Shown piece by piece: positions 1,232 to 63,883 of a DNA stretch of 64,000 nucleotides. A program made the translations under genes and the position numbers. The notes beneath the pieces are model-generated. The model saw only the letters and a program-made list of their open reading frames with translations, ran no database searches and was not told the DNA's origin. Where the stretch lies: the IMG/VR virus record IMGVR_UViG_3300027985_000843, positions 307,740 through 371,739 of that record. One strand, written 5' to 3'. How positions within the stretch are numbered: the first letter of the stretch is position 1; every line of letters begins with the position of its first letter.

Positions 1232-1268
1232 CCGAACTCTTCCCGAGCCCCGACGTAGTAGGGGCATG
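1232..1268 (+). promoter_or_regulatory. Class I promoter motif CCGAAC-N16/17-CGTA(G/A)TA-N5-start (representative of about 32 copies)
   Basis: Plus copies (CCGAAC start): 1232, 1874, 2118, 6025, 6238, 12738, 15323, 16450, 18118, 19551, 20567, 21067, 21328, 21739, 25379, 36090, 47313, 55118, 57056. Minus copies (TA(C/T)TACG start): 1056, 34626, 56069, 56341, 60340, 60624, 61135, 61456, 61810, 62435, 63215, 63461, 63563. Confidence 0.85.
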
Positions 1269-1505
1269 AGCATCCAGTGGAACAAGCCGGTCGGGGACGA
1301 ATGGGGTGAGGGTCTGGTTCGCACGAGCAAATGCGGCCGATACCGCATCATCAAGCGGCAAGTGTGTGCCTACTTCAATGGCTGCTACCGCCCCTCCTAC
1401 GAGCTGGAAGTGACGCGGAATGGTGAGACGGAGAAGCATGACGAGCTGGACACTCTCCGGGACGCGAAGGAATGGGCCAAACAGGACGCCGAAGACAACG
1501 GCTGA
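1266..1505 (+). CDS. Hypothetical protein (79 aa)
   Basis: ATG 5 nt after class I motif; MSIQWNKPVGDEW... Confidence 0.75.
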   Translation: MSIQWNKPVGDEWGEGLVRTSKCGRYRIIKRQVCAYFNGCYRPSYELEVTRNGETEKHDELDTLRDAKEWAKQDAEDNG

Positions 1506-1517
1506 AGGGACACGACC

Positions 1518-1868
1518 ATGAACGCCACCTACTCCAACCAAGAAAACCTGACCGACTGGGACCTCATCGTTGCGTGCCTTTCCCCCACGAAGGGCACCAT
1601 CACGATCCACACTGCTGCCGACAGGCAAGCTCGCCTCCTGTGCGATGGGATGGGCAAGCTCTCTGTGGCGGACCTCCCGGCCGACCTCTACCCTCTGTAT
1701 GACTGGTCGCACGTCCGCGACTCGTCCGAAGCAGCCGTGACCGAGTGTGCCAAGTTCCTTCGACAGTACCTCCGCCTGTCCGACTTGGCCCTCAAGGCCA
1801 ATGACGCCCTGAGCCGGGGCGACACGGCCACCTACAATGAAGCCTTGGAAGCTTTGAAGGCATCCTGA
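1518..1868 (+). CDS. Hypothetical protein
   Basis: Track ORF, coding-like composition, aaggga upstream. Confidence 0.7.
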   Translation: MNATYSNQENLTDWDLIVACLSPTKGTITIHTAADRQARLLCDGMGKLSVADLPADLYPLYDWSHVRDSSEAAVTECAKFLRQYLRLSDLALKANDALSRGDTATYNEALEALKAS

Positions 1869-1907
1869 TTTCTCCGAACCTTCGTCGACCTGTGTCGTAG
1901 TAAGACC

Positions 1908-2108
1908 ATGAAGAAGCCTCAGACCTCAGAGCAGCCCCGACCCATCACCGCTTTCAACCGTGACAATGAACTCGTTTACATCAAGGAGTCCATGGATAGC
2001 CTGAATCAAAAGAGCCCCGACAGCTTCGTCAAGTGCAGCTACAAGCTTCGCGGGGGGTGCACGTTCACCACCCAAAAACGGCTTCTCCGAGACATCTGCG
2101 AAGGCTGA
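1908..2108 (+). CDS. Hypothetical protein (66 aa)
   Basis: ATG 5 nt after class I motif. Confidence 0.7.
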   Translation: MKKPQTSEQPRPITAFNRDNELVYIKESMDSLNQKSPDSFVKCSYKLRGGCTFTTQKRLLRDICEG

Positions 2109-2151
2109 CACTTTTCTCCGAACCTTCGTCGACTTACATCGTAGTAAGACC

Positions 2152-2301
2152 ATGAACACTCCCCGTAACATCATCATGGCTGCTGTGGCGGCCAACGACC
2201 CTACCCGCTTTCACTCTCGCACCGTCCAGCCCACCAAGGGCAAGGGACGCAAGTCCCGCCCCCGCAGCTCCAACAGAAGCCGCCGTGAGTGGGGTGTCTG
2301 A
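2152..2301 (+). CDS. ArfA-like (alternative ribosome rescue factor A-like) small basic protein, 49 aa
   Basis: MNTPRNIIMAAVAANDPTRFHSRTVQPTKGKGRKSRPR resembles the ArfA pattern N-x-I-x-A...DP-x-F-x-x-R...KGKG; class I promoter; below ORF-track cutoff. Confidence 0.55.
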   Translation: MNTPRNIIMAAVAANDPTRFHSRTVQPTKGKGRKSRPRSSNRSRREWGV

Positions 2302-2841
2302 TTTTGGTAGCGGTCGGTCTCTCAGTGGTGTATCTAGTCTGCATAACACCACTGGTGAACGCCGACTGCCGTCTAGCCCCCCCCCCAACAGCAGTCGGCG
2401 TTTCTTTTCCATGGTGTAGGTCATGTGGCACATTGAAGTGTGGTCGAAGACACTCCACAAGTGGGTGGAGGTAGGGACCGACGAAGACTCGACTTTCGTC
2501 GAGGAAGGGATCCAGTCCCTCGCGGTCGTGCATCATACGGCTCGGGCGTGGCGAGAGTCCGGAGAGGGCTGGACGGGCATGCAAGCCAGCCTGTACCGAG
2601 GATTCTGTCGATGGACGGGATCCGGCGGCCTTGTTCGGTGTATCTAGTTGTTCATGTCCCGTGAACAGGCTCGATCCTTGATCAAGGCCCTTGGCCTACC
2701 TGTGGCAGACGCTTCCGTCGAAGATCTTGAGGAAGCCCTGTCAGATGAACCCACGTCGAGGTTCGCGCTCTTTGACCCCGATCGTCTCATATCCGAGGAA
2801 ATGAGCCCCGGGGGAATCATCCTACCTGGGAAGGAGTTGTC

Positions 2842-5308: not shown

Positions 5309-5317
5309 GAGGCCACC

Positions 5318-6022: not shown

Positions 6023-6058
6023 CTCCGAACTTCTCCCGCCCAGGGGCGTAGTAGGGGC

Positions 6059-6235
6059 ATGTATACTCACAAAGAAGCCCTAGCCGAGAAGAAACGTCGG
6101 AAGTTACCTCACAAGGTCCTGAAGAAGGTCAAGCACGACCCTCTCTGTCTTGTCTCCGACGGTCTACTCACCCCGGCACACGAGTGCACTTGCGGTAGCA
6201 AGGAGCACACCTACTACCTCCAGCTCGGCAAATAA
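6059..6235 (+). CDS. Small basic hypothetical protein (58 aa)
   Basis: ATG 5 nt after class I motif; MYTHKEALAEKKRRK...HECTCG. Confidence 0.65.
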   Translation: MYTHKEALAEKKRRKLPHKVLKKVKHDPLCLVSDGLLTPAHECTCGSKEHTYYLQLGK

Positions 6236-6271
6236 TCCCGAACTCTTCCCGTCGGCCGGCGTAGTAGGGGC

Positions 6272-6571
6272 ATGGAGCCTGAACTACAGTCCGTCGAAGC
6301 CTTCGTTGAATATCTCCTGGAAGATGAGCGGGACAGCTTCACCTTCGAGGAAGCCACAGAGCTGGCCGAAGCCCTCGGGTTGTCGGTTCCGACTCCTGTC
6401 ATCCGTGAGCTGAAGAGCTACGGGCTGACCATGGTCCCCCGCACGCCCGAAAAACGCGTGCGGGGGTTCCACTCCAACAACCATGACCGGTGGTACGGGC
6501 CCGGGGCCTGCCGCACGCATGGTGGCTCGGGATGGGAACAGATCACCGGTATCGCAGGGCAGGAGGGGTGA
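6272..6571 (+). CDS. Hypothetical protein
   Basis: Class I promoter, track ORF. Confidence 0.75.
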   Translation: MEPELQSVEAFVEYLLEDERDSFTFEEATELAEALGLSVPTPVIRELKSYGLTMVPRTPEKRVRGFHSNNHDRWYGPGACRTHGGSGWEQITGIAGQEG

Positions 6572-7813: not shown

Positions 7814-9070
7814 ATGAGTCTCTTCAAGACTGCGGCAGACCTCATCGCAGAAGGCAAGTCATCGGAAGCGTTCGATCTCATCCTCAAGGGCGAGGTCGTC
7901 GAAGACTCCCGGGACTTTATCGCCAACCAGCTGGGACGCGATGTCCCCTGGTGGGACCGAGCAGACATCCAGCCAGCTGGATCTCGGATGAGCACGGAGC
8001 CGGACTCCTGGATCGGTCACTCCCTACTCAAGAAGGCCATCGAGGGCGGCCCGCCTGTCCACAACAGTGAGTGGGCTGGTCAGCTCGTGGTGCCGGGCAA
8101 GCACCTGGTACAGGCGTGCGAGAAGGTGCTCGGCCTCCGACCCGTGTGGGTCCGGGGCAGCTCCATCCTGTTCGCCTCCGAAGAGACCATGCTCAAGATC
8201 TGGTTCACTGGTCGGGATAAGAATGCCTCGGCCGAGATGGTGACCTCGTCGGCGAAGTTGATGAAACACGCCTCCCAGCTCTTCGACAGATGCCTCACTC
8301 ATGAGAGTGCCAAGAAGGGACACGTCTTCACCCTCGTGGCAACCATGCACGGTTACCGTGTCGCTCAACTCGGCACGGCAGGCAATCCTATCGAGCGTGG
8401 GAACTACAGCCCGGAGACCCTCAAGGCGTACGATCACATTGCCCAGGAACTCAACGCGGAGGACCCTGACGGCCGCTTGAGCATCCTCGCGGGTGAGCCC
8501 GGGACCGGAAAGACCTACCTCATCCGAAGCCTTCTCGGAGAGTGTCCCAAGGCCGCCTTCATCGTGGTACCGCCCCAGATGGTCGAGAACCTCGGTTCCC
8601 CCGAGATGCTCCCAGCCCTGGTCAACGCCCGCGACATGATGGACGGCCCCATGGTTCTCATCCTGGAGGACGGCGACTCTTGTCTCGTGGCTCGAAAGAA
8701 GCTTGGGGAGACAGCAGCAGACAAGACAAGCAACATGAACGCCATCAGCTCCCTACTCAACCTCGGGGACGGCATCCTTGGTTCGGTGCTCGACCTGCGC
8801 ATCGTGGCGACCACGAATGCGGAGGAGATCGACCTGGACCCGGCCATCCAACGTCCAGGCCGCTTGAGCATCTACGCCAAGGTCGATGCCCTGCCGCCCA
8901 ACGTCGCGGCCGCCGCCTTGTCCCGCCTCACGGGCCAGAAGGTTGCCTTCGACAAGTCTGCAACCATTGCAGAAGTCTACAAGCGGGCTCGGGAGATGGG
9001 TTGGAAACCGGACACCAAGAAGAAGAAGGCTGAGAAGCAGAAGCAGCTCCGCCTCGACATTCTCACTTGA
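7814..9070 (+). CDS. AAA+ ATPase (single domain)
   Basis: Walker A GEPGTGKT, Walker B LILEDGD, sensor TTN, second region of homology DPAIQRPGR. Confidence 0.9.
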   Translation: MSLFKTAADLIAEGKSSEAFDLILKGEVVEDSRDFIANQLGRDVPWWDRADIQPAGSRMSTEPDSWIGHSLLKKAIEGGPPVHNSEWAGQLVVPGKHLVQACEKVLGLRPVWVRGSSILFASEETMLKIWFTGRDKNASAEMVTSSAKLMKHASQLFDRCLTHESAKKGHVFTLVATMHGYRVAQLGTAGNPIERGNYSPETLKAYDHIAQELNAEDPDGRLSILAGEPGTGKTYLIRSLLGECPKAAFIVVPPQMVENLGSPEMLPALVNARDMMDGPMVLILEDGDSCLVARKKLGETAADKTSNMNAISSLLNLGDGILGSVLDLRIVATTNAEEIDLDPAIQRPGRLSIYAKVDALPPNVAAAALSRLTGQKVAFDKSATIAEVYKRAREMGWKPDTKKKKAEKQKQLRLDILT

Positions 9071-9461
9071 TCGATGACTCGGGGAGCTTAGCGACGAGGA
9101 AGCTCCCGCCCCTCTGCCACGCCCGCTTCTCCAATCGGAACTTGAGCCCACGCTTCTTCATCGTGTCGATGACGTCCTTCATCGCAGCGTAGGCTTCCGG
9201 GTTCACGACGTCCGACAGTTTCGCCCCCGCGTCCATCATGTCGCGGGCGGTGTCGATGTCGTACTGGAGGTAATCGGAGGGGTCGATGTTGAAGGCGAAC
9301 ACCCGGGTTTGGGTGTTGAAATACCGGCGGCCCCGAGGGTACTTCTTGTGGGCTGCGTGAGCCCTCGGGCCGAGCCACTTCATGAGCTGGTCGAACTCTC
9401 GATCGGACAGCTCGCGAGCTTCCAGGTACCTGTTGACAACCCTCTCTGTGGACTCACTCAT
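9063..9461 (-). CDS. Hypothetical protein with N-terminal ERVVNRYL motif
   Basis: Track ORF, internal ATG at 9461. Confidence 0.7.
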   Translation of the reverse strand: MSESTERVVNRYLEARELSDREFDQLMKWLGPRAHAAHKKYPRGRRYFNTQTRVFAFNIDPSDYLQYDIDTARDMMDAGAKLSDVVNPEAYAAMKDVIDTMKKRGLKFRLEKRAWQRGGSFLVAKLPESSIK

Positions 9462-9521
9462 GACTACCCTCGCGGACAAGAACTTCTGTTGGTACTACGT
9501 CTCGGCGAGGGTCTGGTTCGG

Positions 9522-12735: not shown

Positions 12736-12783
12736 CTCCGAACTCCACCTGGTCGGGGACGTAATAGGACAAAGGAACCGAGC

Positions 12784-13497
12784 ATGAGCCGCAACCGAAA
12801 GAAGCCGTCCCTGGGGGCGGCAATGATCATCTACCTCATCAGCTTCCTGATCTCAGGCAGTGTCATTGCCCTCACGCACTGGGTGAGTCCCGGACTCATC
12901 CCCCTGACCACGAGCGACATCTGGAGCTATCACAATACCGGCTTCGGAGAATGGATGCTCACGGCCTTGCCCCTTCTCGGGTGGGGGTTCGGGGCCTCGC
13001 TCATTTCTGGCCTGATCAACGGGTCCGACCCCTATGTGAGCGGCGGTGAGATCCTCGTGAAGGGGGCTACTATCAGTGCCTTCGCTGGAATCTTCGAGGA
13101 GTTGGCTCACCGGTGGCTTTCGTTCCTCGGGGCCTTTGGTGTTCTTGCCGTCACGAACTACCTTCTGGGAGGCTTCGTGTTCGGGACAGGTCTGCCTGAG
13201 TGGCTTCACAACAATGTGTGGGGCCATCTCGCGGACTGGACCACCTTCGGGATGCTGCACGACTGGATCTATCATCCGGGCGGGTGGCTCGTAGGCGCAG
13301 CCATGCTCTACAGCAACGCCGTCTTCCGCGACGGTCACAAGTATCAGGGGTGGTTCGGCTACATCAACTCGTGGTTTATCGGGATGTACCTGTTTTACAT
13401 CATGTTTCACCACGGGCTCCTAGCCGCCATTCTCGTGCACTTTGCCTACGACATGGTCATTTTCACGGTGCGTGCGCTTTTAGCCGGCCGATCTTAA
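12784..13497 (+). CDS. CPBP (CAAX/Abi-like) intramembrane metalloprotease
   Basis: Multiple TM helices; GIFEELAHRW (EExxxR), FRDGH (FxxxH), HFAYD (HxxxD/N); class I promoter plus AAAGGA SD. Confidence 0.72.
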   Translation: MSRNRKKPSLGAAMIIYLISFLISGSVIALTHWVSPGLIPLTTSDIWSYHNTGFGEWMLTALPLLGWGFGASLISGLINGSDPYVSGGEILVKGATISAFAGIFEELAHRWLSFLGAFGVLAVTNYLLGGFVFGTGLPEWLHNNVWGHLADWTTFGMLHDWIYHPGGWLVGAAMLYSNAVFRDGHKYQGWFGYINSWFIGMYLFYIMFHHGLLAAILVHFAYDMVIFTVRALLAGRS

Positions 13498-14774: not shown

Positions 14775-15332
14775 ATGAACACCGCAACGCCTTACAACGT
14801 CCTGTACTACGGTCAGTGGGGGCAGCCCGGGCACTACCTACTCGACGAATACGGCAGGACCGTCCGTATGGCTGTTCAGAAGAGCCTGCTGCCCTGGACA
14901 GAAGGGCAATACTACAGCCTACCGCCGGGCTTTCGTAGGAGTGGGTACGACATCATCGAAGCTCCACAAGGCCACGCATCCCTGCATCGCAAGGGTGGCT
15001 GGACGGCCCTAGCCTTCTGGGATCGCTCGGGCGACCATCGGGGGAATTCGATGAGCTGCTTCTTCGTCCGGGGCGAGCACACCTTCGACGAAGTGGTCCA
15101 GATCACGAAGGAGCGGCTCCCTTCCCTTTGGAAGCGGTTCCCTTTCGAGGTCATCTGCAAGGAGGACCAGGGCATCCTCAACCCCGACCACCTGTCCTTG
15201 GAGGAGAAGGCTGCCGACTATGCTCGGGTCACCGACATGCTCAGGCAAGTCATCGAAGATCGAGACAAATGGCGGCAGCGGGCCAAGGATCTTGAGGCTG
15301 ACCTCAAGCATGCAGAAAAATGCCGAACTTGA
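14775..15332 (+). CDS. Hypothetical protein
   Basis: Class II promoter; in-frame ATG of track ORF. Confidence 0.75.
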   Translation: MNTATPYNVLYYGQWGQPGHYLLDEYGRTVRMAVQKSLLPWTEGQYYSLPPGFRRSGYDIIEAPQGHASLHRKGGWTALAFWDRSGDHRGNSMSCFFVRGEHTFDEVVQITKERLPSLWKRFPFEVICKEDQGILNPDHLSLEEKAADYARVTDMLRQVIEDRDKWRQRAKDLEADLKHAEKCRT

Positions 15333-15356
15333 TCAGTCGGCAGGCGTAGTACGGGC

Positions 15357-15707
15357 ATGAAGACCCTGACCACCGAAGACCTCGCCAACTGGGAAGCCGT
15401 CTCCGCCGTCGCTTGGAAAGAATGCGACGACCGAAAGCTCACGAAGGTCGAGAAGATCGCCGTGACTATCAAGGCTCTCCGTGATGACCCCGACGCCTTC
15501 CGCGTCAGAGAGCTTCTCGTCCCCATGTCCCAGCGAGAAGTCTGTGCTGTCCTTCGGACCCACATGGTCCTCATCAACTCGGTGCTCGGGACCACCTACC
15601 GCTACGTGGGGGCGAGCTACGCCCCCTCCGGGCGGGGAGCCTTCGGTCGGCTCGGGGGCGGCCATCGGGGTCACTACAGCGAGCCGTGCCTGCTCAGCTA
15701 CACGTGA
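15357..15707 (+). CDS. Hypothetical protein, paralog of 21362..21733
   Basis: Shared W..C.DR.LT..EK and SGRGAFGRL.GG.R.HYS.P motifs; class I promoter. Confidence 0.8.
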   Translation: MKTLTTEDLANWEAVSAVAWKECDDRKLTKVEKIAVTIKALRDDPDAFRVRELLVPMSQREVCAVLRTHMVLINSVLGTTYRYVGASYAPSGRGAFGRLGGGHRGHYSEPCLLSYT

Positions 15708-16426: not shown

Positions 16427-16483
16427 TCGGTGTATCTACGTCGAAAGCTCCGAACTCTTTCGAAGCTCTGACGTAGTACGGAC

Positions 16484-16717
16484 ATGAGCAACCCCTACCA
16501 TATCGCACTCGTTGTCGGAGCCGCTGTCGCCGCCCTTCAGGCGGACCCGGACTTCGGTCACATCGCCACCGTCCACACCAACGCGGACCCCGGGGTATGG
16601 CTCAAGACGGGCGAGGACGTCCATTGCTTCGTGTGCGCCCAAGACAACCTGGGTAACTTCTCCTGCGTGACGCAGGAGGGCTACGTACGCCAGTACCTGG
16701 CGAGTGAGGTGGACTGA
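16484..16717 (+). CDS. Hypothetical protein
   Basis: Class I promoter. Confidence 0.75.
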   Translation: MSNPYHIALVVGAAVAALQADPDFGHIATVHTNADPGVWLKTGEDVHCFVCAQDNLGNFSCVTQEGYVRQYLASEVD

Positions 16718-18116: not shown

Positions 18117-18152
18117 TCCGAACTCTTGCTCGGTCCCGTCGTAGTACGGGCA

Positions 18153-18796: not shown

Positions 18797-19584
18797 ATCA
18801 CTCGGACTTCGAAGTGTCCAAGACGAACCGGACCGACGCCGGCCAGTGGTTCGTGATGACGAGCCCCGACTACCACTTAGGGGACCGTCTTCAGGCGGAA
18901 GCCTCAAAGGTGAGGGCGCCGAACCGAGAAGGCGTGTTGACGCTGGTCTTCGAGAATCTGGACGGCACCCGCTGGGCTGACCACGAGGATCTGCTGATTC
19001 CGGCCGACGAATTCTGGGCCACTACCTACAAGTACAAGGGCGAGGAGCGCCCCGTCAATGCCAACCGCAAGAGCTGGACCTTCTCTCGGGGTTGGATCAA
19101 GTGCAAGGTGAGTGCGGCCAAGAAGCACTATCCCGAGATTTTCGTTGTTCCCACAGTGGATGAGATCCTACACAACGTCAGCATCCTCAGGCCGAGCCCA
19201 GTTCAGCGAGCACTGGCAAAGCTGCACGACGCCTTCGGCTACCCTCGCATTGCTCGTGTCACCTTCGACGTCCTCATGGAGCATGTCTCATGCAGTGCAA
19301 GCTAACTCATCGATACGACAGCACTTTTGCAAGCCTCCCGGACGACCAGGGAGGTGAGGGCCGCCACAAGTGTGCCGGCTGTGCCTACGCGAAGGGCTAT
19401 CAGCAGGGCCTTGCGCTCCAAAGCACCATGATCCTTGACCTCCGGAAGCTTCCAGATTCCCAGGCGGGGTCCGTTCGGCACAAGAGTCCTCACGCAGCCT
19501 TCGCTCTGGGCTATCTTCACGGAGTCATGGCCCGGTATGGAACGAAAGATCCGAACCTATCTGTCACTCGAACGTAGTATCAAC

Positions 19585-20061
19585 ATGGAACCTCGCTACG
19601 AACACCGCTGTGAGACTTGCGTCTTCCTTGGGCACCACGAAGACAAGGACCTGTATTGGTGCGCATCGAAGTCGAACCGCAGGCTGGACTCCATTATCGC
19701 TCGCCTGTCGAGCGAGCCTTCTGACTACCTGAGCAGTCACCCGCCTGGGGCCTTCGCCGGCCCGCCCCTGCCGCAATCCTGGTACGTCGCCGCCCTCAAG
19801 GCGGCCGAAGCCAAGGGCCTGTACGACCCCAAGGTGCAAGGATGGGTCCAGGACAGGGGTTGCATCGCCTGCGGCCATAAGTGGGTCGCAGAGTACCCTT
19901 ACGGGTCCACAGAGCAGTCTCCTGAGAAGTGCCCGGAGTGCGGGAGCTTCAAGACCTACCACGACAACGAATGCCAGTGGTGCGACGGCACTGGGTTCAC
20001 CCCCACTGGTATCATGTGCCACACCTGCCATGGCTCGGGAGAGAAGGCCAGGCGTGCCTAA
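19585..20061 (+). CDS. Hypothetical protein with multiple CxxC zinc ribbons
   Basis: Class I promoter at 19551; CIAC, CPEC, CQWC, CHTC. Confidence 0.75.
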   Translation: MEPRYEHRCETCVFLGHHEDKDLYWCASKSNRRLDSIIARLSSEPSDYLSSHPPGAFAGPPLPQSWYVAALKAAEAKGLYDPKVQGWVQDRGCIACGHKWVAEYPYGSTEQSPEKCPECGSFKTYHDNECQWCDGTGFTPTGIMCHTCHGSGEKARRA

Positions 20062-20566: not shown

Positions 20567-20600
20567 CCGAACTGGTTGAGCTGGCCGTCGTAGTACAGGC

Positions 20601-20833: not shown

Positions 20834-21361
20834 GAGGAACGGATCATGCTACGCGGAACCCCGACTGAAGCTTTGGTGATGCGGCACAAGACCTCCGGTC
20901 GAGAAGCCAGCCCCTACGGCTCGGCCCCTTGGACGGGAGCCCAGGGCGACACGGAAGCCGACTGGGAAATGGTCCAGGTGGGATGGACGGTTCGCTGGAA
21001 CGACGGAACCATCGGCCTTCGGGTGCGGCCTCCCATGGCCTCCCAAGAGGAGGTCGAAACTTTTCTCCGAACCACTGGCCGATTGGAGGCGTAGTACAGT
21101 CATGGAAACAACGCTAGACCGAGTGGAATTCGTTCAACGTAGGATCGCTGAGAGGCTGGAGATTGCCAAGACGCTTCGGGAGCGGGCAGCAGGTCTTAAT
21201 GAAACTGATCCCGAGTCGGCTGAAGACTATCGCCGTCGAGCAGACGACGCGGAGTCTGTAGCTCTGGGTCAGAGGTCTGTTCTTTTGACTCTGTTCCCCC
21301 ACCTGGATCTATAGCCCAACGATTTTTCCGAACTCTTTCGGCCGGCCGTCGTAGTACGAGC

Positions 21362-21733: not shown

Positions 21734-21773
21734 TTTCTCCGAACTCGCACCCTCCGAAGAGCGTAGTACGACC

Positions 21774-24525: not shown

Positions 24526-25392
24526 ATGGGAACCTTCAACGCCACCTGCTGTGTGTCCAGTCTGCCAATCCTCGAAGGCGAGCCCGCCGTAGAGATTCTC
24601 CTCCTGCCCGGCAGGACTCACCCACACAAGGAAGCTTGCTTTCCCACCCTCGGAAGCTACTCTGGGTCCAGTCACGGTCCCGGGTCCTTCTACCGCCCAT
24701 TCCTGTGGCCCATCCACGGGATCTATGGAAGTGCCGGCTCTCTGTTCGCTGAGTACGAGGACGACCCCCAGCCCACGGTAGCAGTTCCCGAGCTGTTCGA
24801 GCGTCTCCTGTTTCAGTCGCTGAGGCACACCGCCGAGATGATTCCGGAAGGGGACTCGCCCGAGTATGTCCAGTGCGAGCCTATGTCGCTGAACGAGCTG
24901 CTCAAGCGAAGGGCCTACTTCCACCATCCTGTCAAGATCGACACCTCGTTCGGGTGGATGCCCCTGTACTCAACTCTCGTTCGCAAGGACATCTGGGACG
25001 CCCTCCAGGGCCTCGCTTTCGAAGAGATCCATGAAGGGGCTGAGGAGTACCTCCGCGACATGAAGAAGCCGGCGGGTCTGGCAGAAGCTCTCAGTCGAAC
25101 GGCGTCGCTGGAGGGGTGGGACAACATGTTCTGCCATGTGTTGTATCCGTACGGGATAGTGGGCATCGACAGGCACCTGCTGGAAGTGCCCCTGCAAGAC
25201 GCCCAGAAGGTCGTTGCTGCCCTCGTCGAGCTGCTCCACGTCGACGCACACATGGACTTGCTCCGGAAGCACTGGGGGCCCATGACGGGGGCGGGGAGCC
25301 AAGATGACGAGTTCGACGCCCACGTCCGGTTTGCCGACATCGTTCGGAAGATTGCGGTCACCAAGCGTGACGAATTGTCCGAACGATACTGA
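24526..25392 (+). CDS. Hypothetical protein (MG.FN.TC.VS.LPI..G phage-type N-terminus)
   Basis: Class II promoter; 288 aa. Confidence 0.75.
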   Translation: MGTFNATCCVSSLPILEGEPAVEILLLPGRTHPHKEACFPTLGSYSGSSHGPGSFYRPFLWPIHGIYGSAGSLFAEYEDDPQPTVAVPELFERLLFQSLRHTAEMIPEGDSPEYVQCEPMSLNELLKRRAYFHHPVKIDTSFGWMPLYSTLVRKDIWDALQGLAFEEIHEGAEEYLRDMKKPAGLAEALSRTASLEGWDNMFCHVLYPYGIVGIDRHLLEVPLQDAQKVVAALVELLHVDAHMDLLRKHWGPMTGAGSQDDEFDAHVRFADIVRKIAVTKRDELSERY

Positions 25393-25412
25393 CCGACCAG
25401 CGTAGTAGAGCT

Positions 25413-34620: not shown

Positions 34621-34678
34621 GCTCGTACTACGGTGGTCAGGGACCAAGGTTCGGACAAATCGGTGTATGGTCGAAGGT

Positions 34679-35775: not shown

Positions 35776-36123
35776 AGTCTTCGCATGAACAAGGACCTCG
35801 AAGACCTTTTCAATCAGGACATCGACACCAATGACATCTTGGACGGTGTCGCCCGAAAAGTCCTATCCCTCCCGGGAGGGGCCCGCCTCGCTGCCGAGAC
35901 AGCGACCAACTATCTCAAGCAGGTGATGGCTGATGGCCCGGAAGACAGCACCACGATCACCCTGCCCCGCCGGACCATCAACCGCCTCGTCATTGTCCTC
36001 GAAGGTTTGGCCTTGTACGCCGACGACAGGCCGAAAGGCGAGGCGTAGAATCCAGTAGCACTGAATCTCCGGCTGACGGTCAGAAAATTCCGAACCCTTG
36101 TCCGTGCCTGACGTAGTACAGAC

Positions 36124-40764: not shown

Positions 40765-40801
40765 CTGCCTCGTAAAGGCCCGGCCGGTGTATCTTGGTGT
40801 G

Positions 40802-45175: not shown

Positions 45176-45216
45176 CCGAAGTAAATCAGCCTCTCGTATC
45201 GGTGTAGAGTCCCCTC

Positions 45217-47282: not shown

Positions 47283-47346
47283 GACACCGCCTGGCAAAAA
47301 ACACCCGGGTCTCCGAACTCCTAGCCACCGCCGTCGTAGTACCACC

Positions 47347-47622
47347 ATGGAACCAACTCAAGATCCTACCGACGCCTACTTCCAAACCATCTCCCTCGAT
47401 ACGTCCAACTACATCGGCCATACGGACGACACCGATGGTGTCGAACCCGACAAGGCTGTCCGCTACGTCCACGAATACGATTCCAACGCCACCGTTGTCG
47501 TCCTCTGGTACGCCTACGCCGGGCGTGCCTGCATCATCACCAACGGTGGTGACAAGTGGACCGACGCCGATGACCCCGAAGATGCCCTCTTCCGGTACTG
47601 CTCCGGCACGATGGTCGAGTAG
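47347..47622 (+). CDS. Hypothetical protein
   Basis: Class I promoter. Confidence 0.75.
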   Translation: MEPTQDPTDAYFQTISLDTSNYIGHTDDTDGVEPDKAVRYVHEYDSNATVVVLWYAYAGRACIITNGGDKWTDADDPEDALFRYCSGTMVE

Positions 47623-54732: not shown

Positions 54733-55269
54733 TGGCCCGAAGGGCCGAGGGCGTGGCAAAAACACGGGCGGGAGAGGGTTTGGGATTATCGGGGCGTTTT
54801 TCGGCCAAAAAATGACCGGGGCGGGATTTTGGATTTTTGACTTTTCGAACCACAGAGCGCAATACGTACCCTAAACACGCCCCGTAGCCCTCTTTGTCAA
54901 TCTCAAAGTCATAATACGTCGGTTCTGCTACGGCGGTAATTCAGCCCCCTCCGGAGGTCCGCCCCGGCCAGTGACCTGGCCTCGAACCCAACACCCCGAC
55001 CCCCGTCCATCTCGTACGCCCTCACGGTAAGCGCGTAGCTCACGCCCACGAGCCCACCACCCCAGGGCAACGCCCGCGAGGGCGGCCGCCAAAGGTGTGA
55101 GAAGGGGGACGATTTGTCCGAACATGCGAGCCACCGCGAGCGTAGTAAGGGTGTGGCGGGTGGGAGCCCCCTCCCACAGGGAGGCCGGGAGGATCGAGCC
55201 TCCCACCCGCACACCTACACCTCGACACAAGGAGATTGTTCGAGCGTATGCCCAGGGCCTGAGCCATGC

Positions 55270-55452
55270 CCCTGGGCAGGGGGCGTAGCCCGAGGCCCTG
55301 GGCAGGGGGCGTAGCCCGAGGCCCTGGGCAGGGGGCGTAGCCCGAGGCCCTGGGCAGGGGGCGTAGCCCGAGGCCCTGGGCAGGGGGCGTAGCCCAGGGG
55401 GCGTAGCCCGAGGCCCTGGGCAGGGGGCGTAGCCCGAGGCCCTGGGCAGGGG
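55270..55452 (+). repeat. 26-bp tandem repeat (ccctgggcagggggcgtagcccgagg), about 7 copies
   Basis: Unit starts at 55270, 55296, 55322, 55348, 55374, 55414, 55440; one 14-bp partial duplication; inverted copies near 55485 and 55517. Confidence 0.95.
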
Positions 55453-55745: not shown

Positions 55746-56063
55746 TCACGACCCTAGGGCCTCAAGGGCTTCGGGGGTCGGCACGTAGCCGCGTAGCTCC
55801 CGACTGCCCTCATAATAGACCCTGTCCACGAGGCCCTGCTTCGCGAGCTTCGACAGGTACCCGCCCGCGAGCAAGTTCCGCTTCGGGTTGTTCGCGGGGA
55901 TGGGGCGGGATGTCTCCTCCGGCCACATGACCCGGCCGAATACCGCCGCCTTCACGGGGCGTCCCTGGCCGATCCGGACCAGGATCTTGATCGCCTTGAG
56001 GGCTGTGGGCGTCATGCTTCCTCCGTGTCTCGCGAACTTCCCGATGGTGGTGTTGGTATTCAT
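55746..56063 (-). CDS. Hypothetical protein (possible winged helix)
   Basis: Class I promoter; GGYLSKLAKQGLVDR. Confidence 0.7.
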   Translation of the reverse strand: MNTNTTIGKFARHGGSMTPTALKAIKILVRIGQGRPVKAAVFGRVMWPEETSRPIPANNPKRNLLAGGYLSKLAKQGLVDRVYYEGSRELRGYVPTPEALEALGS

Positions 56064-56098
56064 GACCGTACTACGCTCCCCGAACATCCAAGTTCGGA

Positions 56099-56335
56099 TT
56101 AAACTTCGTCTCGAAGGATGTTCACGAGAAGCGTGGGGTCATCGGCCGCGCCATCGAAGTTGCAGAGGCAGGCCGTCCACCGAAGGGGTGGCTCGCCAGG
56201 AAACGGTGAGGGGGACTCGACGTCGACCACCCACCCTCCAGGGATATAGCGGGGCTCATCCGTGGTCGTGACGACCCCGGAATGGTTCACCTTGTACTTG
56301 AGGCCCTTCTTGACCTCGCCGTGGCTCATGCTCAT
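56099..56335 (-). CDS. Hypothetical protein
   Basis: Class I promoter. Confidence 0.7.
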   Translation of the reverse strand: MSMSHGEVKKGLKYKVNHSGVVTTTDEPRYIPGGWVVDVESPSPFPGEPPLRWTACLCNFDGAADDPTLLVNILRDEV

Positions 56336-57241
56336 GCACGTACTACGCTCGCCACCGGGAGGAGTTCGGAACCCTCTTCCATTTTGGCGGCTTCCACCAC
56401 ACGGTCCCAGAAGAGCATGTTGATCACGTCAACCACGAGGCGGATGATCGCGCCGTTCCAACGAATCGAACACTTCACGATGTCTGCGTCCAAGAAGGGT
56501 TGCAGCCGCTCGGCGATCCATTGGTCGATCGCTATCAGGACCTCGTTCAGCGGCTCGGGGAAGTCCACGATCAGACTGTTCGAACGCACCTCGACGAAGC
56601 GACCCATCTAGCTGTCCTCCTCGACACACGATCCCCCGACGTGCGTCGCGTAGACATTGGCTGCTCGGATGATCGCATTGATCTTGGTGGTCCCCTGCCG
56701 GAACCATTTGCGGCGTGTCTTGCGGTCGGACAGAGACACGAAGCTCGTTCGACTCACGTCCCCCACAGACATTCGCCGCTGCCGCATGAGCCGTCGCGTC
56801 GATGCTCGATACATCTCCGCGCAGCTGTCGCACAACGGCCAGATTAATCCTCCCCCGCTCACAAAGAACACAGCGGCTTGCCCCCCGCATCGTGCTCGAT
56901 GAGCGTTCCCCCTGAACACACAATCGATCATGTCCGGATCGTATACCGGCCCGGTCGGGGATCAAGCACAAATCCTACTGGATTGCGTTTTCGTGCAGGG
57001 CGAAATGACTTAAATATGCAGGCATTCTCCCTCCTCGCGTGTCCCGACGAATTATCCGAACTTCCGGGCGCGGGAGATCGTAGTAAGGGTGTGGCGGGTG
57101 GGGACCGGCCCCGATCCGGGCCTCATGGAAGATCGAAGCCCCCGGAACCGTCCCGATCCGAGGGCCTACCTCCGTAGTGAGGCCCTGTGAGGGTACGCCC
57201 CGGGCCCGGGGCGTGTCAACTATACCGAATGTTCTCGATGA

Positions 57242-60079: not shown

Positions 60080-60334
60080 TCACTTGCAGGGGTCGGGGTT
60101 GCCGTACTCCGCCGCGACGGTGCGGGGACTGTCGAGCCCCGCAGCTTCCAGGACGTCACACGCTGCCGACAGCGTCTCTTTGCAGCCCGAAAGCTGCGCC
60201 TTCAAGAAGGCAACCTGGGTCTCCAGGTCTTGGATGCGAAGAGCCTGGTCCAGCTCCTTGCGGGTCGGGCGGTCGACCGAGGGGCTTCGAAGCTGCGGCA
60301 TGGCGGGGTCTCTGTCTGCGGTGTTGGTGTTCAT
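60080..60334 (-). CDS. Hypothetical protein
   Basis: Class I promoter. Confidence 0.75.
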   Translation of the reverse strand: MNTNTADRDPAMPQLRSPSVDRPTRKELDQALRIQDLETQVAFLKAQLSGCKETLSAACDVLEAAGLDSPRTVAAEYGNPDPCK

Positions 60335-60378
60335 GTCTCTACTACGCTCCCCGAAGGCCAAGGTTCGGAAAAATCGTC

Positions 60379-60618
60379 TCACTCGTCTTCGCACTCAGCT
60401 CGTTCCGTGAGGATGTCGTCCACCAGGGACTCGAAGGCTTCCTTGCTGTCGACGTCTTCGACGTACTCATCGTTGTCGTCCCAGCATTCCAGCCGGGTGC
60501 CACCTTCGTAGTCCTCGTGCTCTTCCGAGTAGGTGACCTTCAGAAGGGCGAAGCCTTCGTAGCGGGCGACGGTCACGTGGGCGATGTAGGCGGGGTGCTC
60601 GGTGATGTTGGTGTTCAT
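60379..60618 (-). CDS. Acidic hypothetical protein
   Basis: Class I promoter. Confidence 0.75.
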   Translation of the reverse strand: MNTNITEHPAYIAHVTVARYEGFALLKVTYSEEHEDYEGGTRLECWDDNDEYVEDVDSKEAFESLVDDILTERAECEDE

Positions 60619-60940
60619 GTCTCTATTACGCTCCCCGAAGGCCAAGGTTCGGTGAAAAGTTCACTTCTCGCAGCGGTGTCGGTCGAACCGCTTGCTGTCG
60701 ACGCTGACTTCGCATCCACAGCCGGGGCAAACCAAGAAGAGGCTGCCCTCTCGCACCACCGCAGTGGTCCCCAGCTGCTCACTGCCCACCTTCATGTTGC
60801 GAGCCGTCTTCGAGCCCGGGACCATACTGTAGACGTCAGCAGCTCGAATGCTCTCGCGGGAGCGAATCTGCATTGCCCACCCCCGGATTCTCGCCACGAC
60901 CTCTTTCCAGGTCTTGGCTGACATGTCTTGGGCACCCATG

Positions 60941-61129
60941 TCAGTTGACATCCCCAGCACCAACGCGGTTGGCGGCCCACTCGAAGTTGCCGCAGCGGAC
61001 CGCACGGTTGTTGGCGTGACGCTCGCGGCGGCGAGCAGTGACCTTGATGCCCCGGAGGGTGGCCTCACCGTCAACGGTGCGGCGGGTGGCCTTACGAGCT
61101 GCGCGGGTGGTGGTCATCTTGGCGTTCAT
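60941..61129 (-). CDS. Basic hypothetical protein
   Basis: Class I promoter. Confidence 0.7.
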   Translation of the reverse strand: MNAKMTTTRAARKATRRTVDGEATLRGIKVTARRRERHANNRAVRCGNFEWAANRVGAGDVN

Positions 61130-61171
61130 GGTCTTACTACGCTCCCCGGAGGTGATGGTTCGGAAGAAAGA

Positions 61172-61450
61172 TCAGACCGTGAGGACTTGCTTCGCGTAGC
61201 TCTTCGCGGCCTTGAGGGTCGCCCTCGCGTCCCCACCCTTGGGCACGCTGAACTCTCGGTCCTTGTCATCGATGCCGAAGAAGCGAACCTCGTAGCTGCC
61301 TGCGCGGTACTCGTGAATCGAGCCACCAACGTCGACCACGTGCTTGATCAGCTCCCCAACCGACTCCCCATCGACCAGGACTTCGCACGACTGGTCGTCA
61401 TGCCAGAGACCCGAGATCGATTCCATCTTGCTGAAGGTGACCTTGCTCAT
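61172..61450 (-). CDS. Hypothetical protein
   Basis: Class I promoter. Confidence 0.75.
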   Translation of the reverse strand: MSKVTFSKMESISGLWHDDQSCEVLVDGESVGELIKHVVDVGGSIHEYRAGSYEVRFFGIDDKDREFSVPKGGDARATLKAAKSYAKQVLTV

Positions 61451-61495
61451 GCCCGTACTACGATCAGGGCGAGGGAAGGTTCGGAAGAAAATGGT

Positions 61496-61804
61496 TCACC
61501 AAACTCGGTCGGGCTCGTAGTCGTACCCACGAGGGGCCGGCTCGGCCTCAGGCTCCTCTTCCGGCCCTCGGTCACACAGGATGATGGCTTCCGCCATCTC
61601 ATAGCCGACGTCATCGGCCAGCTCGTCCAGGGCCTCGTCACGGTCCTCGATCTTCTGGACGGCCTGGGCCGCCGCGTGGACCCGGCGAGCCTCTCTGAGG
61701 GCCCTCTGCGCCCCGCGAACGGCCTCTTCGGCCATCTCCAGGGCGATCTCCGCGTCTTCGATTGCGGTGTAGGTGTCGTAGGTCCAGGGTTTTGAAGTTG
61801 CCAT
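61496..61804 (-). CDS. Acidic coiled-coil hypothetical protein
   Basis: Class I promoter. Confidence 0.75.
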   Translation of the reverse strand: MATSKPWTYDTYTAIEDAEIALEMAEEAVRGAQRALREARRVHAAAQAVQKIEDRDEALDELADDVGYEMAEAIILCDRGPEEEPEAEPAPRGYDYEPDRVW

Positions 61805-61844
61805 GTCCCTACTACGCTCCCCAGCCTCAAAGGTTCGGAACAAA

Positions 61845-62018: not shown

Positions 62019-62028
62019 CTCGCCTCCT

Positions 62029-62159
62029 TGGTGGAGCTGACCGGAATCGAACCGGCTTCCCCGTTCACGGTCTGCCTAAAGGCCCTTCTCGGGCCATCCA
62101 GGTCCCCCCGGCCCTGGCCTAGCTTTCGCTCGAACGGGAGGTGCCATACCTCCAGCCCC
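62029..62159 (-). ncRNA. 131-nt tmRNA-like/tRNA-Ala-like RNA
   Basis: 5' GGGGCUG pairs with CAGCUCC-A-CCA 3' (G3.U70, A73); T arm GCCGG-UUCGAUU-CCGGU; helix CCCGUUC/GAACGGG; 3-nt linker GAA. Confidence 0.8.
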
Positions 62160-62162
62160 GAA

Positions 62163-62429
62163 TCACACCCTGCTGAAGTCCACCACCTGGGTCATGGCCT
62201 TGATCGTCTGCGCATAGGTCGTCGAAGCAATCCAGATGGCAAGGTCGTAGCTCCCAGGGGTTCTGTCCTTCGGAAACGTCTCCTGGAAGCACTGCCACAG
62301 GCCCATCCCCCACTCGGGGTCAGGATCCTCACCCCGATGCACGGCAAGCTGAACCTGCTCGCGGGCCGCGTCGATAGCCCAGGTGATGATTGCTTCGTTG
62401 CTCTTGCCGATTTCGTTCAAGGTTGCCAT
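62163..62429 (-). CDS. Hypothetical protein
   Basis: Class I promoter; stop 3 nt before the tRNA-like RNA. Confidence 0.75.
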   Translation of the reverse strand: MATLNEIGKSNEAIITWAIDAAREQVQLAVHRGEDPDPEWGMGLWQCFQETFPKDRTPGSYDLAIWIASTTYAQTIKAMTQVVDFSRV

Positions 62430-62451
62430 GCCCGTACTACGATCCCCGGCC

Positions 62452-62829
62452 TCAAGAGTTCGGAGAATTCTTTCCCCTGGCCTTCCGCTGCCGCTCCGCC
62501 TCCCGCTCCAGGGCGGGGTACTTCCCTGGAGGAAGCCCGCACAGGCCGGCAAGCTCCGGCCCCATGTCCCGAGCCAGTTGCCGCCGCTCCCGCCTCACGG
62601 CCTCTTGCTCCCGCCGCTCTGCCTCCTCCCTACGGGCCCTCAAGATGTCCCGTAGCCTCCCTATGTCTGTCCTCACCTTGAACAGGATGAGACCCTCACC
62701 ACGGCCCTCCAGGAAGGCTTCCCCGGCCAGGGACTCAGCCACCATCGCTTCCAAGGTCGCGTCGTCGATGAGCCTCACGTCCCCTCGATCAAACGCATCC
62801 CATGCTGCTCGCATTGTCGAACGTTCCAT
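62452..62829 (-). CDS. Hypothetical protein
   Basis: GGAGG SD; track ORF. Confidence 0.65.
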   Translation of the reverse strand: MERSTMRAAWDAFDRGDVRLIDDATLEAMVAESLAGEAFLEGRGEGLILFKVRTDIGRLRDILRARREEAERREQEAVRRERRQLARDMGPELAGLCGLPPGKYPALEREAERQRKARGKNSPNS

Positions 62830-62996
62830 GTCACGCCTCCTCCCGAAGCATCTCCTCCAGGATCGAATCCGCCAGCTCTATCTGAGCCTTGTAATCCTCG
62901 ACAGTCAGCCCAAGGCGGTCTGCCTCCTCCTGCCACCACTCCTCAGGCGAGGACGAGGACAGGGGAACCAACGTCCGCGAACGGCCAATGTACGGC

Positions 62997-63209
62997 CTAC
63001 CAGCCGGTGTCGTTCTCACAGCTCCGCCTCCTATTGTCCGGGCCCTTCTCGGCCAGCGTGGTGCCATCCTCGCCTCTCCAGATGACTCTGCCAACGGTCA
63101 GCGTCAATCGCTGCCCACTCGCCTTGGTCACCGTGACTGTCTGGCCCTCGACCAGGTCCGTTCCACGAAGGCCCCAGTTCCCGTTCTTCAACTTGGCGAA
63201 GGTTGTCAT
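62997..63209 (-). CDS. Hypothetical protein
   Basis: Class I promoter. Confidence 0.7.
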   Translation of the reverse strand: MTTFAKLKNGNWGLRGTDLVEGQTVTVTKASGQRLTLTVGRVIWRGEDGTTLAEKGPDNRRRSCENDTGW

Positions 63210-63883
63210 GCTCGTACTACGACCCCCGCCCCCCAAGGTTCGGAACAAAAGCGAAACGGCCCGAGGGCTGGTCCTCCCTCAGGCCGTCTCAGAACAGAGC
63301 CACGCAGGGACCAGCTGCGCGGTATCCAGACGGCTACCTCGGCCAGTCTATCGGCCCGGGACTCTAACCCAAGAGGCTAGCTCGTCAGCGTCAGACCTAC
63401 GTCAGGTCTGGGAGGGCTCGCACCTCCCCGGCCACCATTGGCCGTCTCTGCTCTCCCCCCTACTACGTCCGCCAAGCCCAGATGTTCGGATCAAAGATCC
63501 CAGGCCAGGCCCCGGGCCGAAGAGCCCCTGGCCCCGCCGGGGACTCCCACCCGCCACACCCGTACTACGACCCCGCCTCACCAGAAGTTCGGAAAAATCT
63601 CACGCACCCCACCACAAAAATTCCACGGGGCTCGCACACCCACCCACGCCCCCGTACATGGCCCGGGCCGGTGGATTCCAGTGAGGGCGGAGCGAGGGGG
63701 CCCGATTTGGCAATCGTGCTGCGCCTTTGAGCGTAAGTGTACGGAAATATTGAGGAATTCCCGGGCAATGGCTGGGGGGCGTGAAAACGTTTGCAATCCG
63801 GCCCCCCTTCCCGGCCCTTGCCCTTGAATTTGCCTGGCCTTGAACACGGCCTGTCGGCCACGTTCGAGGCCGAGCAGCCATCA

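What the first reader, a model, noticed from the sequence alone, without database searches (positions are those of the whole stretch)
1232..63592. About 32 copies of a rigid ECF-sigma-like promoter feeding leaderless small genes
Seen: CCGAAC-N16/17-CGTAGTA on both strands, followed in most copies by exactly 5 nt and ATG with no Shine-Dalgarno. The genes are small, and several start ATG-AAC-AC (MNT...). Established: AAC at -35 with CGT at -10 is the typical ECF sigma signature. Inference: a whole regulon, probably early genes, is transcribed as leaderless mRNA by one host or phage ECF sigma. No sigma gene is in this window.
Basis: partly seen in the sequence, partly recalled or inferred. Interest (0 to 1): 0.72.

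Follow-up and report, generated by a model that had tools for sequence, protein, structure and literature searches.

The report
Phage sigma promoters for leaderless genes
A huge uncultured phage from a hydrothermal-vent metagenome carries about 55 near-identical two-box promoters, most placed so that transcription should start on the ATG of a small gene; they are most likely read by a sigma factor the phage itself encodes just outside this window.

Summary
CCGAAC-N16/17-CGTAGTA occurs 31 times in the window (0.01 expected) and 51 times in the 372-kb phage record. In 40 of 51 copies, 5 nt separate the motif from an ATG that opens a coding ORF of median 92 aa. Copies sit only in the ORFan-rich arms and are absent from the 76-253 kb replication/structural block. 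Spacers and downstream proteins are unrelated, so selection acts on the two boxes and their spacing.

A second huge phage (G001, 51% GC against 59%) has 23 exact copies. Both phages encode two adjacent, virus-only sigma-70-family genes, 24 kb upstream of the window in this record. These genes follow a dual promoter: a distal TTGAC/TAnnnC box pair of the host primary-sigma type, and a proximal copy of the motif. In at least 10 more distant relatives the dual promoter persists, and the -35 box changes with the phage lineage while CGTA stays.

Best reading: a host-sigma early promoter makes the phage sigma, which then turns on its own gene and about 55 mostly leaderless units. No RNA data exist, so start sites, and which sigma reads the motif, are inferred. 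Leaderless starts are not special to this class; a second class, GGTGTAT-N9/10-ATG, is also abundant.

The parts
1056..1084 (-). class I promoter, N16; ATG at +6; ORF 748-1050 (101 aa)
1232..1260 (+). class I promoter, N16; preceded by a hairpin plus T-run; ATG at +6; ORF 1266-1502 (79 aa)
1874..1902 (+). class I promoter, N16; ATG at +6; ORF 1908-2105 (66 aa)
2118..2146 (+). class I promoter, N16; ATG at +6; ORF 2152-2298 (49 aa, MNT...)
6025..6053 (+). class I promoter, N16; ATG at +6; ORF 6059-6232 (58 aa)
6238..6266 (+). class I promoter, N16; ATG at +6; ORF 6272-6568 (99 aa)
9493..9521 (-). class I promoter, N16; not leaderless: leader of about 31 nt with GAGGG before the ATG of a 132-aa ORF (9063-9461)
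12738..12766 (+). one-mismatch copy (CGTAATA); leader with AAGGA; 237-aa ORF 12784-13497
15323..15351 (+). class I promoter, N16; ATG at +6; ORF 15357-15704 (116 aa; paralogue of the ORF at 21362)
16450..16478 (+). class I promoter, N16; ATG at +6; ORF 16484-16714 (77 aa)
18118..18146 (+). class I promoter, N16; ATC at +6 and ATG at +10, giving a 4-nt leader; in frame with ORF ending 18473
19551..19579 (+). class I promoter, N16; ATG at +6; ORF 19585-20058 (158 aa)
20567..20595 (+). class I promoter, N16; ATG at +6; ORF 20601-20876 (92 aa)
21067..21096 (+). class I promoter, N17; ATG at +6; ORF 21102-21311 (70 aa)
21328..21356 (+). class I promoter, N16; ATG at +6; ORF 21362-21730 (123 aa)
21739..21768 (+). 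class I promoter, N17; ATG at +6; ORF 21774-21986 (71 aa, MNT...)
25379..25407 (+). class I promoter, N16; ATG at +6; ORF 25413-25610 (66 aa)
34626..34654 (-). class I promoter, N16; ATG at +6; ORF 34399-34620 (74 aa); back to back with a class II promoter at 34662(+)
36090..36118 (+). class I promoter, N16; ATG at +6; ORF 36124-37542 (473 aa, tyrosine-recombinase-like)
47313..47341 (+). class I promoter, N16; ATG at +6; ORF 47347-47619 (91 aa)
55118..55147 (+). class I promoter, N17; no ORF; followed by a conserved G-rich block and then a 26-bp tandem repeat (55270-55452)
56069..56097 (-). class I promoter, N16; ATG at +6; ORF 55749-56063 (105 aa, MNT...)
56341..56369 (-). class I promoter, N16; ATG at +6; ORF 56102-56335 (78 aa)
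57056..57085 (+). class I promoter, N17; G-rich block subclass; no convincing ORF
60340..60368 (-). class I promoter, N16; ATG at +6; ORF 60083-60334 (84 aa, MNT...)
60624..60652 (-). one-mismatch copy (CGTAATA) with the same spacer as the copy at 60340-60368; ATG at +6; ORF 60379-60618 (79 aa)
61135..61163 (-). class I promoter, N16; ATG at +6; ORF 60944-61129 (62 aa)
61456..61484 (-). class I promoter, N16; ATG at +6; ORF 61175-61450 (92 aa)
61810..61838 (-). class I promoter, N16; terminator-like hairpin just upstream; ATG at +6; ORF 61499-61804 (102 aa)
62435..62463 (-). class I promoter, N16; ATG at +6; ORF 62166-62429 (88 aa)
63215..63243 (-). class I promoter, N16; 16-bp terminator-like hairpin upstream; ATG at +6; ORF 63000-63209 (70 aa; an orthologue in G001 also follows a class I promoter)
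63461..63489 (-). class I promoter, N16; no ATG at +6; G-rich start; product unknown
63563..63592 (-). class I promoter, N17; G-rich block subclass

Best explanation
The motif is the promoter of a phage-specific transcription class, which I call class I. CCGAAC is the -35 box. CGTAGTA is the -10 box, with CGT at -12 to -10. A GAwwTTT tract lies just upstream of the -35 box. The A of the ATG five bases after the -10 box is the transcription start, so most transcripts are leaderless mRNAs for small ORFan proteins.

The promoters are read by host core RNA polymerase carrying a phage-encoded sigma-70-family factor of ECF-like build. That factor is one of two adjacent sigma genes at record positions 283859-282040, 24 kb upstream of the window. 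These sigma genes are first transcribed from a distal promoter of the host primary-sigma type (TTGAC-N18-TAGGAC). They then boost themselves from a proximal class I copy, giving positive feedback, and switch on about 55 class I units in the two ORFan-rich arms of the genome.

Shown: the motif, its statistics, its geometry relative to coding starts, its conservation and lineage-wise co-variation, and the sigma-like nature and position of the genes.
Inferred: the start sites, which of the two sigmas binds the motif, and the timing.
For: 1. Promoter architecture.
- Thirteen invariant bases sit in two boxes with a 16/17-nt spacer of free sequence. Mean pairwise spacer identity is 5.9 of 16.
- The base before the ATG is C in 44 of 51 copies and the next is A in 45 of 51, the usual -1/+1 pair.
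- Forty of 51 copies are fused to real coding starts.
- Only one paralogue pair exists among the 40 products, so this is not a copied cassette.

2. A class, not a general signal.
- All copies lie at 283-372 kb and 0-76 kb. None lies in 76-253 kb. That block holds DNA polymerase, helicase and baseplate genes.

3. No phage RNA polymerase was found by Pfam models.

4. Sigma-1 (303 aa).
- It scores above the Pfam Sigma70_r2 cut-off, as do 26 of 41 family members.
- Nearly all of the 50 best structural matches of its model are sigma factors. They align on the sigma-2 domain and include sigmaE region 2 bound to -10 DNA.
- Its C-terminal part is nearest to region-4 clusters by language-model features.

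5. Sigma-2 (286 aa, the next gene).
- Language-model features score 0.95 to viral sigma clusters.
- It matches TIGR02937 at E 0.005.

6. Conservation.
- G001 has a different GC content and a sigma-1 only 58% identical, yet it has 23 exact copies with unrelated spacers, all within 47 kb on one side of its sigma gene.
- The 17-base pattern that includes CATG hits no other viral contig. It gives only scattered single hits in 185,579 prokaryote genomes.

7. Feedback layout.
- A class I copy lies 34-41 nt before the sigma-1 start codon in G000, G001 and L034.
- A distal TTGAC-N17-19-TAnnnC promoter lies 55-85 nt further up in at least 10 relatives. Only 5 such sites are intergenic in the whole record.

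8. Co-variation.
- In relatives whose sigma-1 is 30-45% identical, the proximal box keeps CGTA(G) but its -35 becomes CTCAAC, CTAAA(C/T/G), CTGAAT or (G/C)TTCAT.
- In several of these relatives (L038, L039, L046, L047, L051, L052, L053) the same variant recurs before other genes of the same locus.

9. The sigma-1 family has 232 clusters in metagenomes and no relative in prokaryote genomes.
Against: - No transcript data: no RNA run was listed. Start sites and timing are therefore inferred.
- Nothing links either sigma physically to the motif. The complex prediction was not run by the tool.
- Structural matches are of middling strength (Z 5-8.6). Region 4 of sigma-1 is not seen by Pfam.
- Lineage-wise change of the -35 box would also arise if hosts differ and a host ECF sigma is used.
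- The record is only about 78% complete, so another sigma or a polymerase could lie in the missing part.
- A third sigma-like protein exists: 225 aa, region 4 only, at 218 kb.
Confidence: 0.62

Rival explanations
1. The promoters are read by a host ECF sigma, for example one released by envelope stress at infection. On this view the phage sigma genes are simply members of that early regulon and serve other promoter classes.
For: - AAC/CGT is the generic ECF signature.
- The sigma genes lie downstream of a class I copy, as any regulon member would.
- Other promoter classes exist that the phage sigmas could serve.
- The -35 box could track host differences.
Against: - The 13 bases are identical in two phages that differ by 8 points of GC and whose sigma-1 proteins are 58% identical.
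- Such rigidity, 51 exact against about 5 plausible variants, is typical of phage-specific recognition rather than a host stress regulon.
- No prokaryote genome shows a cluster of the motif plus CATG.
- The conserved distal primary-sigma promoter before the sigma genes is hard to explain if a host ECF already drives them.
Confidence: 0.2
2. Host primary-sigma holoenzyme is redirected to these sites by a phage activator, in the manner of T4 MotA/AsiA sigma appropriation. Alternatively, an unrecognised phage RNA polymerase reads them.
For: - Many large phage proteins have no Pfam match.
- The record is incomplete.
- Divergent jumbo-phage polymerases escape standard models (PMC7598289, listed).
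Against: - CGTAGTA is not a TAnnnT -10 box, and its position 5 nt from the start does not fit a primary-sigma -10.
- A two-box layout with a 16/17-nt spacer is sigma-like.
- No polymerase domains were found.
- Two sigma-like genes are present and linked to the motif.
Confidence: 0.08
3. The motif is mainly an operator for a repressor or other DNA-binding protein, like the stoperators or start-associated sequences of mycobacteriophages, and not a promoter.
For: - The repeat is rigid, asymmetric and oriented with transcription, which resembles stoperators (own knowledge).
Against: - Two boxes at sigma spacing, a fixed 5-nt distance to the ATG, the C/A pair at the start, absence of any other promoter or ribosome site before 40 genes, and terminator hairpins directly upstream of some copies all need a promoter here.
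Confidence: 0.04

Closest known systems
Bacterial ECF (group 4) sigma regulons, e.g. Bacillus subtilis sigmaW or E. coli sigmaE
   Same: AAC-type -35 box and CGT-type -10 box with a 16/17-nt spacer. The promoter also stands before the sigma gene itself, giving positive feedback. A second, housekeeping-type promoter stands before the sigma operon, as at rpoE (PMC8103513).
   Different: - The sigma genes are viral and have no cellular relatives.
- Sigma-1 is 303 aa with a large insertion in the sigma-2 domain; sigma-2 has a 95-aa N-terminal extension.
- No anti-sigma was recognised.
- The promoter is far more rigid than host ECF regulons.
- Most targets are leaderless.
Phage sigma cascades (SPO1 gp28 and gp33/34; T4 gp55; phiEco32 gp36)
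   Same: Early host-sigma transcription makes a phage sigma, which redirects host core polymerase to a phage-specific, highly conserved promoter class (own knowledge; SPO1 summarised in PMC13401047, listed).
   Different: - Here the sigma gene also carries its own target promoter.
- Two sigma genes sit in tandem.
- The promoter has an ECF-type two-box form.
- Targets are about 55 mostly single-gene leaderless units.
Thermus phage phiYS40 middle/late genes and the '-10 next to the ORF' pattern of Deinococcus-Thermus
   Same: The promoter directly abuts the start codon, so mRNAs are leaderless. TAnnnT lies 6-7 bp before the ORF (PMC12340547). phiYS40's leaderless middle and late genes are from my own knowledge of Sevostyanova et al. 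2007.
   Different: That pattern uses the primary sigma and only a -10 box. It matches this phage's class II (GGTGTAT-N9/10-ATG), not the two-box class I.

Membership tests
ECF (group 4) sigma system | [quoted passage not shown] | tested here: met
   CCGAAC-N16/17-CGTAGTA in 51 copies. The criterion is taken from PMC8103513.
ECF (group 4) sigma system | [quoted passage not shown] | tested here: inconclusive
   - Sigma-1: region 2 found by Pfam. The sigma-2 fold spans residues 20-180 with an insertion, and a disordered stretch covers 176-225. Region 4 is indicated only by language-model features at 0.89.
- Sigma-2: sigma-2 at 96-176 and sigma-4 at 191-284, plus a 95-aa N-terminal extension, at Z of 6 or less.
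ECF (group 4) sigma system | Co-transcribed cognate anti-sigma factor | tested here: not met
   The gene after sigma-1 is a second sigma-like protein, followed by an N6/N4 DNA methylase, in all relatives. No anti-sigma domain was seen. A novel anti-sigma is not excluded.
ECF (group 4) sigma system | Positive autoregulation: the sigma's own promoter stands before its gene | tested here: met
   A motif copy lies 34-41 nt before the sigma-1 start codon in G000, G001 and L034, and lineage variants lie there in at least 8 further relatives. Only the position is shown; the feedback itself is not testable here.
Sigma-70 family | Region 2 (core binding and -10 recognition) detectable | tested here: met
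   PF04542 at 29.3 bits against a cut-off of 24 for sigma-1. 26 of 41 family members match. Structural matches are to sigma-2 domains.
Leaderless mRNA genes | Transcription starts at, or within a few nt of, the start codon | not testable with these tools
   No RNA run was listed for this DNA. The geometry fits: CGT at -12 to -10 and C/A at -1/+1.
Leaderless mRNA genes | No Shine-Dalgarno; the start codon is ATG; a real coding frame follows | tested here: met
   Only 5 nt lie between the -10 box and the ATG in 40 of 51 copies. All 40 ORFs are at least 44 aa. GC3 is 0.76 in frame.

The most novel reading that the evidence does not exclude
A virus-only pair of sigma factors runs a self-amplifying switch that expresses about 55 host-takeover genes solely as leaderless mRNAs. 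A second, -10-only class does the same for much of the rest of the genome. Together with the phage's roughly 46 tRNAs and its tmRNA, this could mean the phage shifts the infected cell to 70S-type, Shine-Dalgarno-independent initiation and so gives its own messages priority. More distant relatives use Shine-Dalgarno leaders behind the same promoter family, so the trait would have been gained within this lineage.
Probability: 0.2. Interest if true: 0.75.

Novelty: new variant of a known kind. Interest (0 to 1): 0.55.

Why it matters
Huge phages are known almost only from metagenomes, and their gene-expression programmes are largely unread. Here the sequence alone yields a testable circuit: a host-type promoter, then tandem phage sigmas, then a self-boosting promoter class with about 55 targets.

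The circuit marks which ORFans belong to one temporal class. It gives exact start codons for dozens of small genes that gene callers misplace. It also offers an unusually rigid sigma/promoter pair, with natural -35 variants, that could serve as orthogonal parts.

Finally, it shows that leaderless expression can dominate a phage genome even though several more distant relatives put SD-type leaders behind the same promoter family, which bears on how phages compete for ribosomes.

Tried and rejected
- RNA evidence: no RNA run holds this DNA. Only two DNA metagenome samples do.
- Known phage records: megablast of 12 kb of the window against GenBank phage records found nothing.
- Sigma-DNA docking: the job was accepted but not folded, so it gives no evidence either way.
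- Phage RNA polymerase: Pfam models for T7-type and multisubunit polymerases found nothing.
- Initiation factors IF1, IF2 and IF3: none in the held 78% of the genome.
- Third 'sigma' hit at 268 kb: it is a LAGLIDADG homing endonuclease with helix-turn-helix ends, so it was rejected.
- Sequence search of sigma-1 against PDB: only noise. Plain Foldseek was not significant. Only the second-look aligner gave consistent sigma matches.
- Duplicated cassette or mobile element: rejected, because spacers and products are unrelated.
- G-rich subclass as a structured RNA: no shared fold and no Rfam family.
- Two motif copies in a 'Thermoplasmata' MAG: they are a coding tandem repeat with no similarity to this phage.
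- Wider records of two relatives could not be opened. The broad sigma alignment was too diverse for locus search.
- Host identity: not resolved.


Full report
**What the window is.** The window is the last 64 kb of a single 371,739-bp IMG/VR virus record. The record is linear, CheckV rates it about 78% complete, and its GC content is 59.4%. It comes from a hydrothermal-vent metagenome. A crude codon-usage gene call gives 473 genes. Genes in the 76-250 kb stretch lie almost all on the minus strand. They include family A DNA polymerase, a UvrD-type helicase, a baseplate J protein and a topoisomerase-Nudix fusion. The two arms, 0-76 kb and 253-372 kb, hold mostly small genes.

**The observation.** The pattern CCGAAC-N16/17-CGTAGTA matches 31 times in the window, against 0.01 expected, and 51 times in the record. 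All copies lie at 283-372 kb or 0-76 kb.
- Forty of 51 copies have ATG exactly five bases after the motif. The chance probability is about 1e-64.
- Each of these ATGs opens an ORF of at least 44 aa. The frame shows the third-position GC excess expected of coding sequence: 0.76 against 0.60 and 0.47.
- Median ORF length is 92 aa.
- The motif is very rigid. Only seven one-mismatch copies exist, where one is expected, and four or five of them look real.
- Flanks add information: a GAwwTTT tract directly upstream of CCGAAC, a pyrimidine-rich start to the spacer, purines before CGTAGTA, and C then A at the base before and at the ATG.
- In some cases the upstream T-tract is also the tail of a terminator-like hairpin.

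**It is not a copied cassette.** The 16-nt spacers share 5.9 of 16 bases on average. Only one pair among the 40 downstream proteins is paralogous. Most products have no Pfam or PHROG match. The exceptions are a tyrosine-recombinase-like protein and a ProQ-C-like protein.

**Who reads it.** No phage RNA polymerase was found. A sigma-70 region 2 match lies at record 283659-283769(-), inside a 303-aa ORF that I call sigma-1.
- Sigma-1's AlphaFold model has a mean pLDDT of 70.7. Re-alignment to PDB gives an almost pure list of sigma factors, superposed on the sigma-2 domain. The list includes sigmaE region 2 on -10 DNA, at Z 6-8.6. These values are middling by the tool's own note, but the hits are uniform.
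- Sigma-1's C-terminal 100 residues are nearest to region-4 clusters by language-model features, at a score of 0.89, which is a lead only.
- The next gene (286 aa, sigma-2) also looks like a sigma. [quoted passage not shown]
- A DNA methylase follows. The order sigma-1, sigma-2, methylase is kept in every relative seen.
- The sigma-1 family has 232 clusters at 50% identity in metagenomes. It has no relative in 185,579 prokaryote genomes.

**Link between the sigma genes and the motif.** A class I copy lies at record 283927(-), 34 nt before the sigma-1 start codon, and here a Shine-Dalgarno-type leader follows.

A second huge phage, G001 (IMGVR_UViG_3300032136_000001), was found by scanning viral contigs for the motif plus CATG; it was the only contig hit.
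- It has 23 exact copies within its first 47 kb.
- Its GC content there is 51.5%, and its spacers are unrelated to those of G000.
- Its sigma-1 orthologue is 58% identical, and a class I copy lies 41 nt upstream of the match to it.

A third relative, L034, has the same arrangement with one base changed.

Further upstream in G000, G001, L034 and at least eight others lies a TTGAC-N17-19-TAnnnC promoter of the primary-sigma type. Only five such sites are intergenic in the whole record.

In relatives whose sigma-1 is 30-45% identical, the proximal box keeps CGTA(G), but its -35 reads CTCAAC, CTAAA(C/T/G), CTGAAT or (G/C)TTCAT. In several of these relatives (L038, L039, L046, L047, L051, L052, L053) the same variant recurs before other genes of that locus. 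In several of those loci the target genes have Shine-Dalgarno leaders.

**Model.** The host primary sigma fires the distal promoter. Sigma-1 and sigma-2 are made. One of them reads class I, boosts its own operon and turns on about 55 units. This fits the ECF hallmarks of AAC/CGT promoters and positive autoregulation (PMC8103513). It does not fit the anti-sigma hallmark, and the domain-only criterion is unclear. I therefore say it works like an ECF system without filing it as a plain ECF member.

**Limits.** No RNA run was listed. The sigma-DNA prediction was not run by the tool. The host is unknown. A host ECF sigma remains a live rival. The points against that rival are the identical boxes in two phages of different GC content, the rigidity of the motif, the conserved distal promoter, and the lack of any cellular genome with clustered motif-plus-CATG sites.

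**Context that changes the reading.** Leaderless starts are not special to class I. GGTGTAT occurs 103 times in the record, about twice a rough base-composition estimate (~48). Sixty copies are followed after 8-11 nt (mostly 9-10) by ATG or GTG opening an ORF of at least 40 aa. This reads as a GGTG-extended TATGnT -10 box placed 6-7 nt before the start, with no -35 box. That is the same geometry as the '-10 next to the ORF' pattern of Deinococcus-Thermus (PMC12340547). This class II is interleaved with class I in the window, with about 25 copies. Several copies head runs of two or more genes, including the 193-aa gene and the Cas12m-like gene after it. It also occurs in G001.

**Exceptions within the window.** Six of the 31 copies do not drive a leaderless ORF.
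- One has a leader of about 31 nt with a ribosome-binding site (9493-9521).
- One has a 4-nt leader (18118-18146).
- Four are followed by G-rich sequence without an ORF. Three of these share a conserved block also found after six G001 copies.

Noticed in passing
window 43908-45176 (+) and ORF 41369-43660 (+): CRISPR-like array of about 19 copies of a 36-nt repeat with unique spacers of roughly 25-40 nt. It lies directly after a 764-aa protein related to Cas12m (PDB 23vw_A, E 4e-20). A 2026 preprint calls a myxophage Cas12m the first in a phage. A class II promoter at 40786 heads the 193-aa gene plus this gene.
   Followed up: partly
record 6001(+), window 1383 (record 349122, +), and L033/L050 about 70 nt before the sigma-1 orthologue: Solo copies of the CRISPR repeat outside the array. 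One lies inside the start of the Cas12m-like gene. One lies in a distant relative at the place where other relatives have the class I box before the sigma gene. Possible self-regulation by the effector; untested.
   Followed up: no
whole window, e.g. 14758/14759, 18438, 25618, 26825, 34662, 40786, 47628: Second promoter class: GGTGTAT followed after 9-10 nt by ATG. It is a -10 box only and leaderless, with 60 copies in the record. Some form palindromic back-to-back pairs (cATACACC-GGTGTATg).
   Followed up: partly
window 55148-55170, 57086-57108, 63540-63562(-); L029 near 299, 2835, 3028, 13910, 15256, 15788: Subclass of class I copies, all with N17 spacers. Instead of an ATG they are followed by a conserved G-rich block of about 17 nt (G[TA]G[TA]GG[CT]GGGnGGG). 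No shared RNA fold and no Rfam match. Function unknown.
   Followed up: partly
window 55270-55452: Perfect 26-bp tandem repeat of about 7 copies, downstream of the promoter at 55118.
   Followed up: no
record 283899-283927(-) and leader; L035 9938-9990; L034 171-225: The class I copy before sigma-1 carries a 7-bp inverted repeat that straddles the -10 box (CyGTTTC ... GAAACrG), with a compensating change between G000 and G001. Possible operator.
   Followed up: no
record 247-276 kb (L019-L021): About 46 tRNA genes and a tmRNA (tag ANDNSAMPVAA), all on the minus strand. Several are followed directly by GGTGTAT promoters.
   Followed up: partly
record 218309-218983(-) (L002:1147-1821): A 225-aa protein with two region-4-like helix-turn-helix units and no region 2, inside the minus-strand block. 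It could be a partner or late factor.
   Followed up: no
record 267327-268262(-) (L003): LAGLIDADG homing endonuclease among the tRNA genes.
   Followed up: no
window 60944-61129(-) versus L029 near 12779(-): Orthologous small genes in G000 and G001. In G001 the ATG at +6 is ATC, and the frame starts at the next ATG 9 nt later. So the promoter position is kept even where the leaderless start is lost.
   Followed up: no
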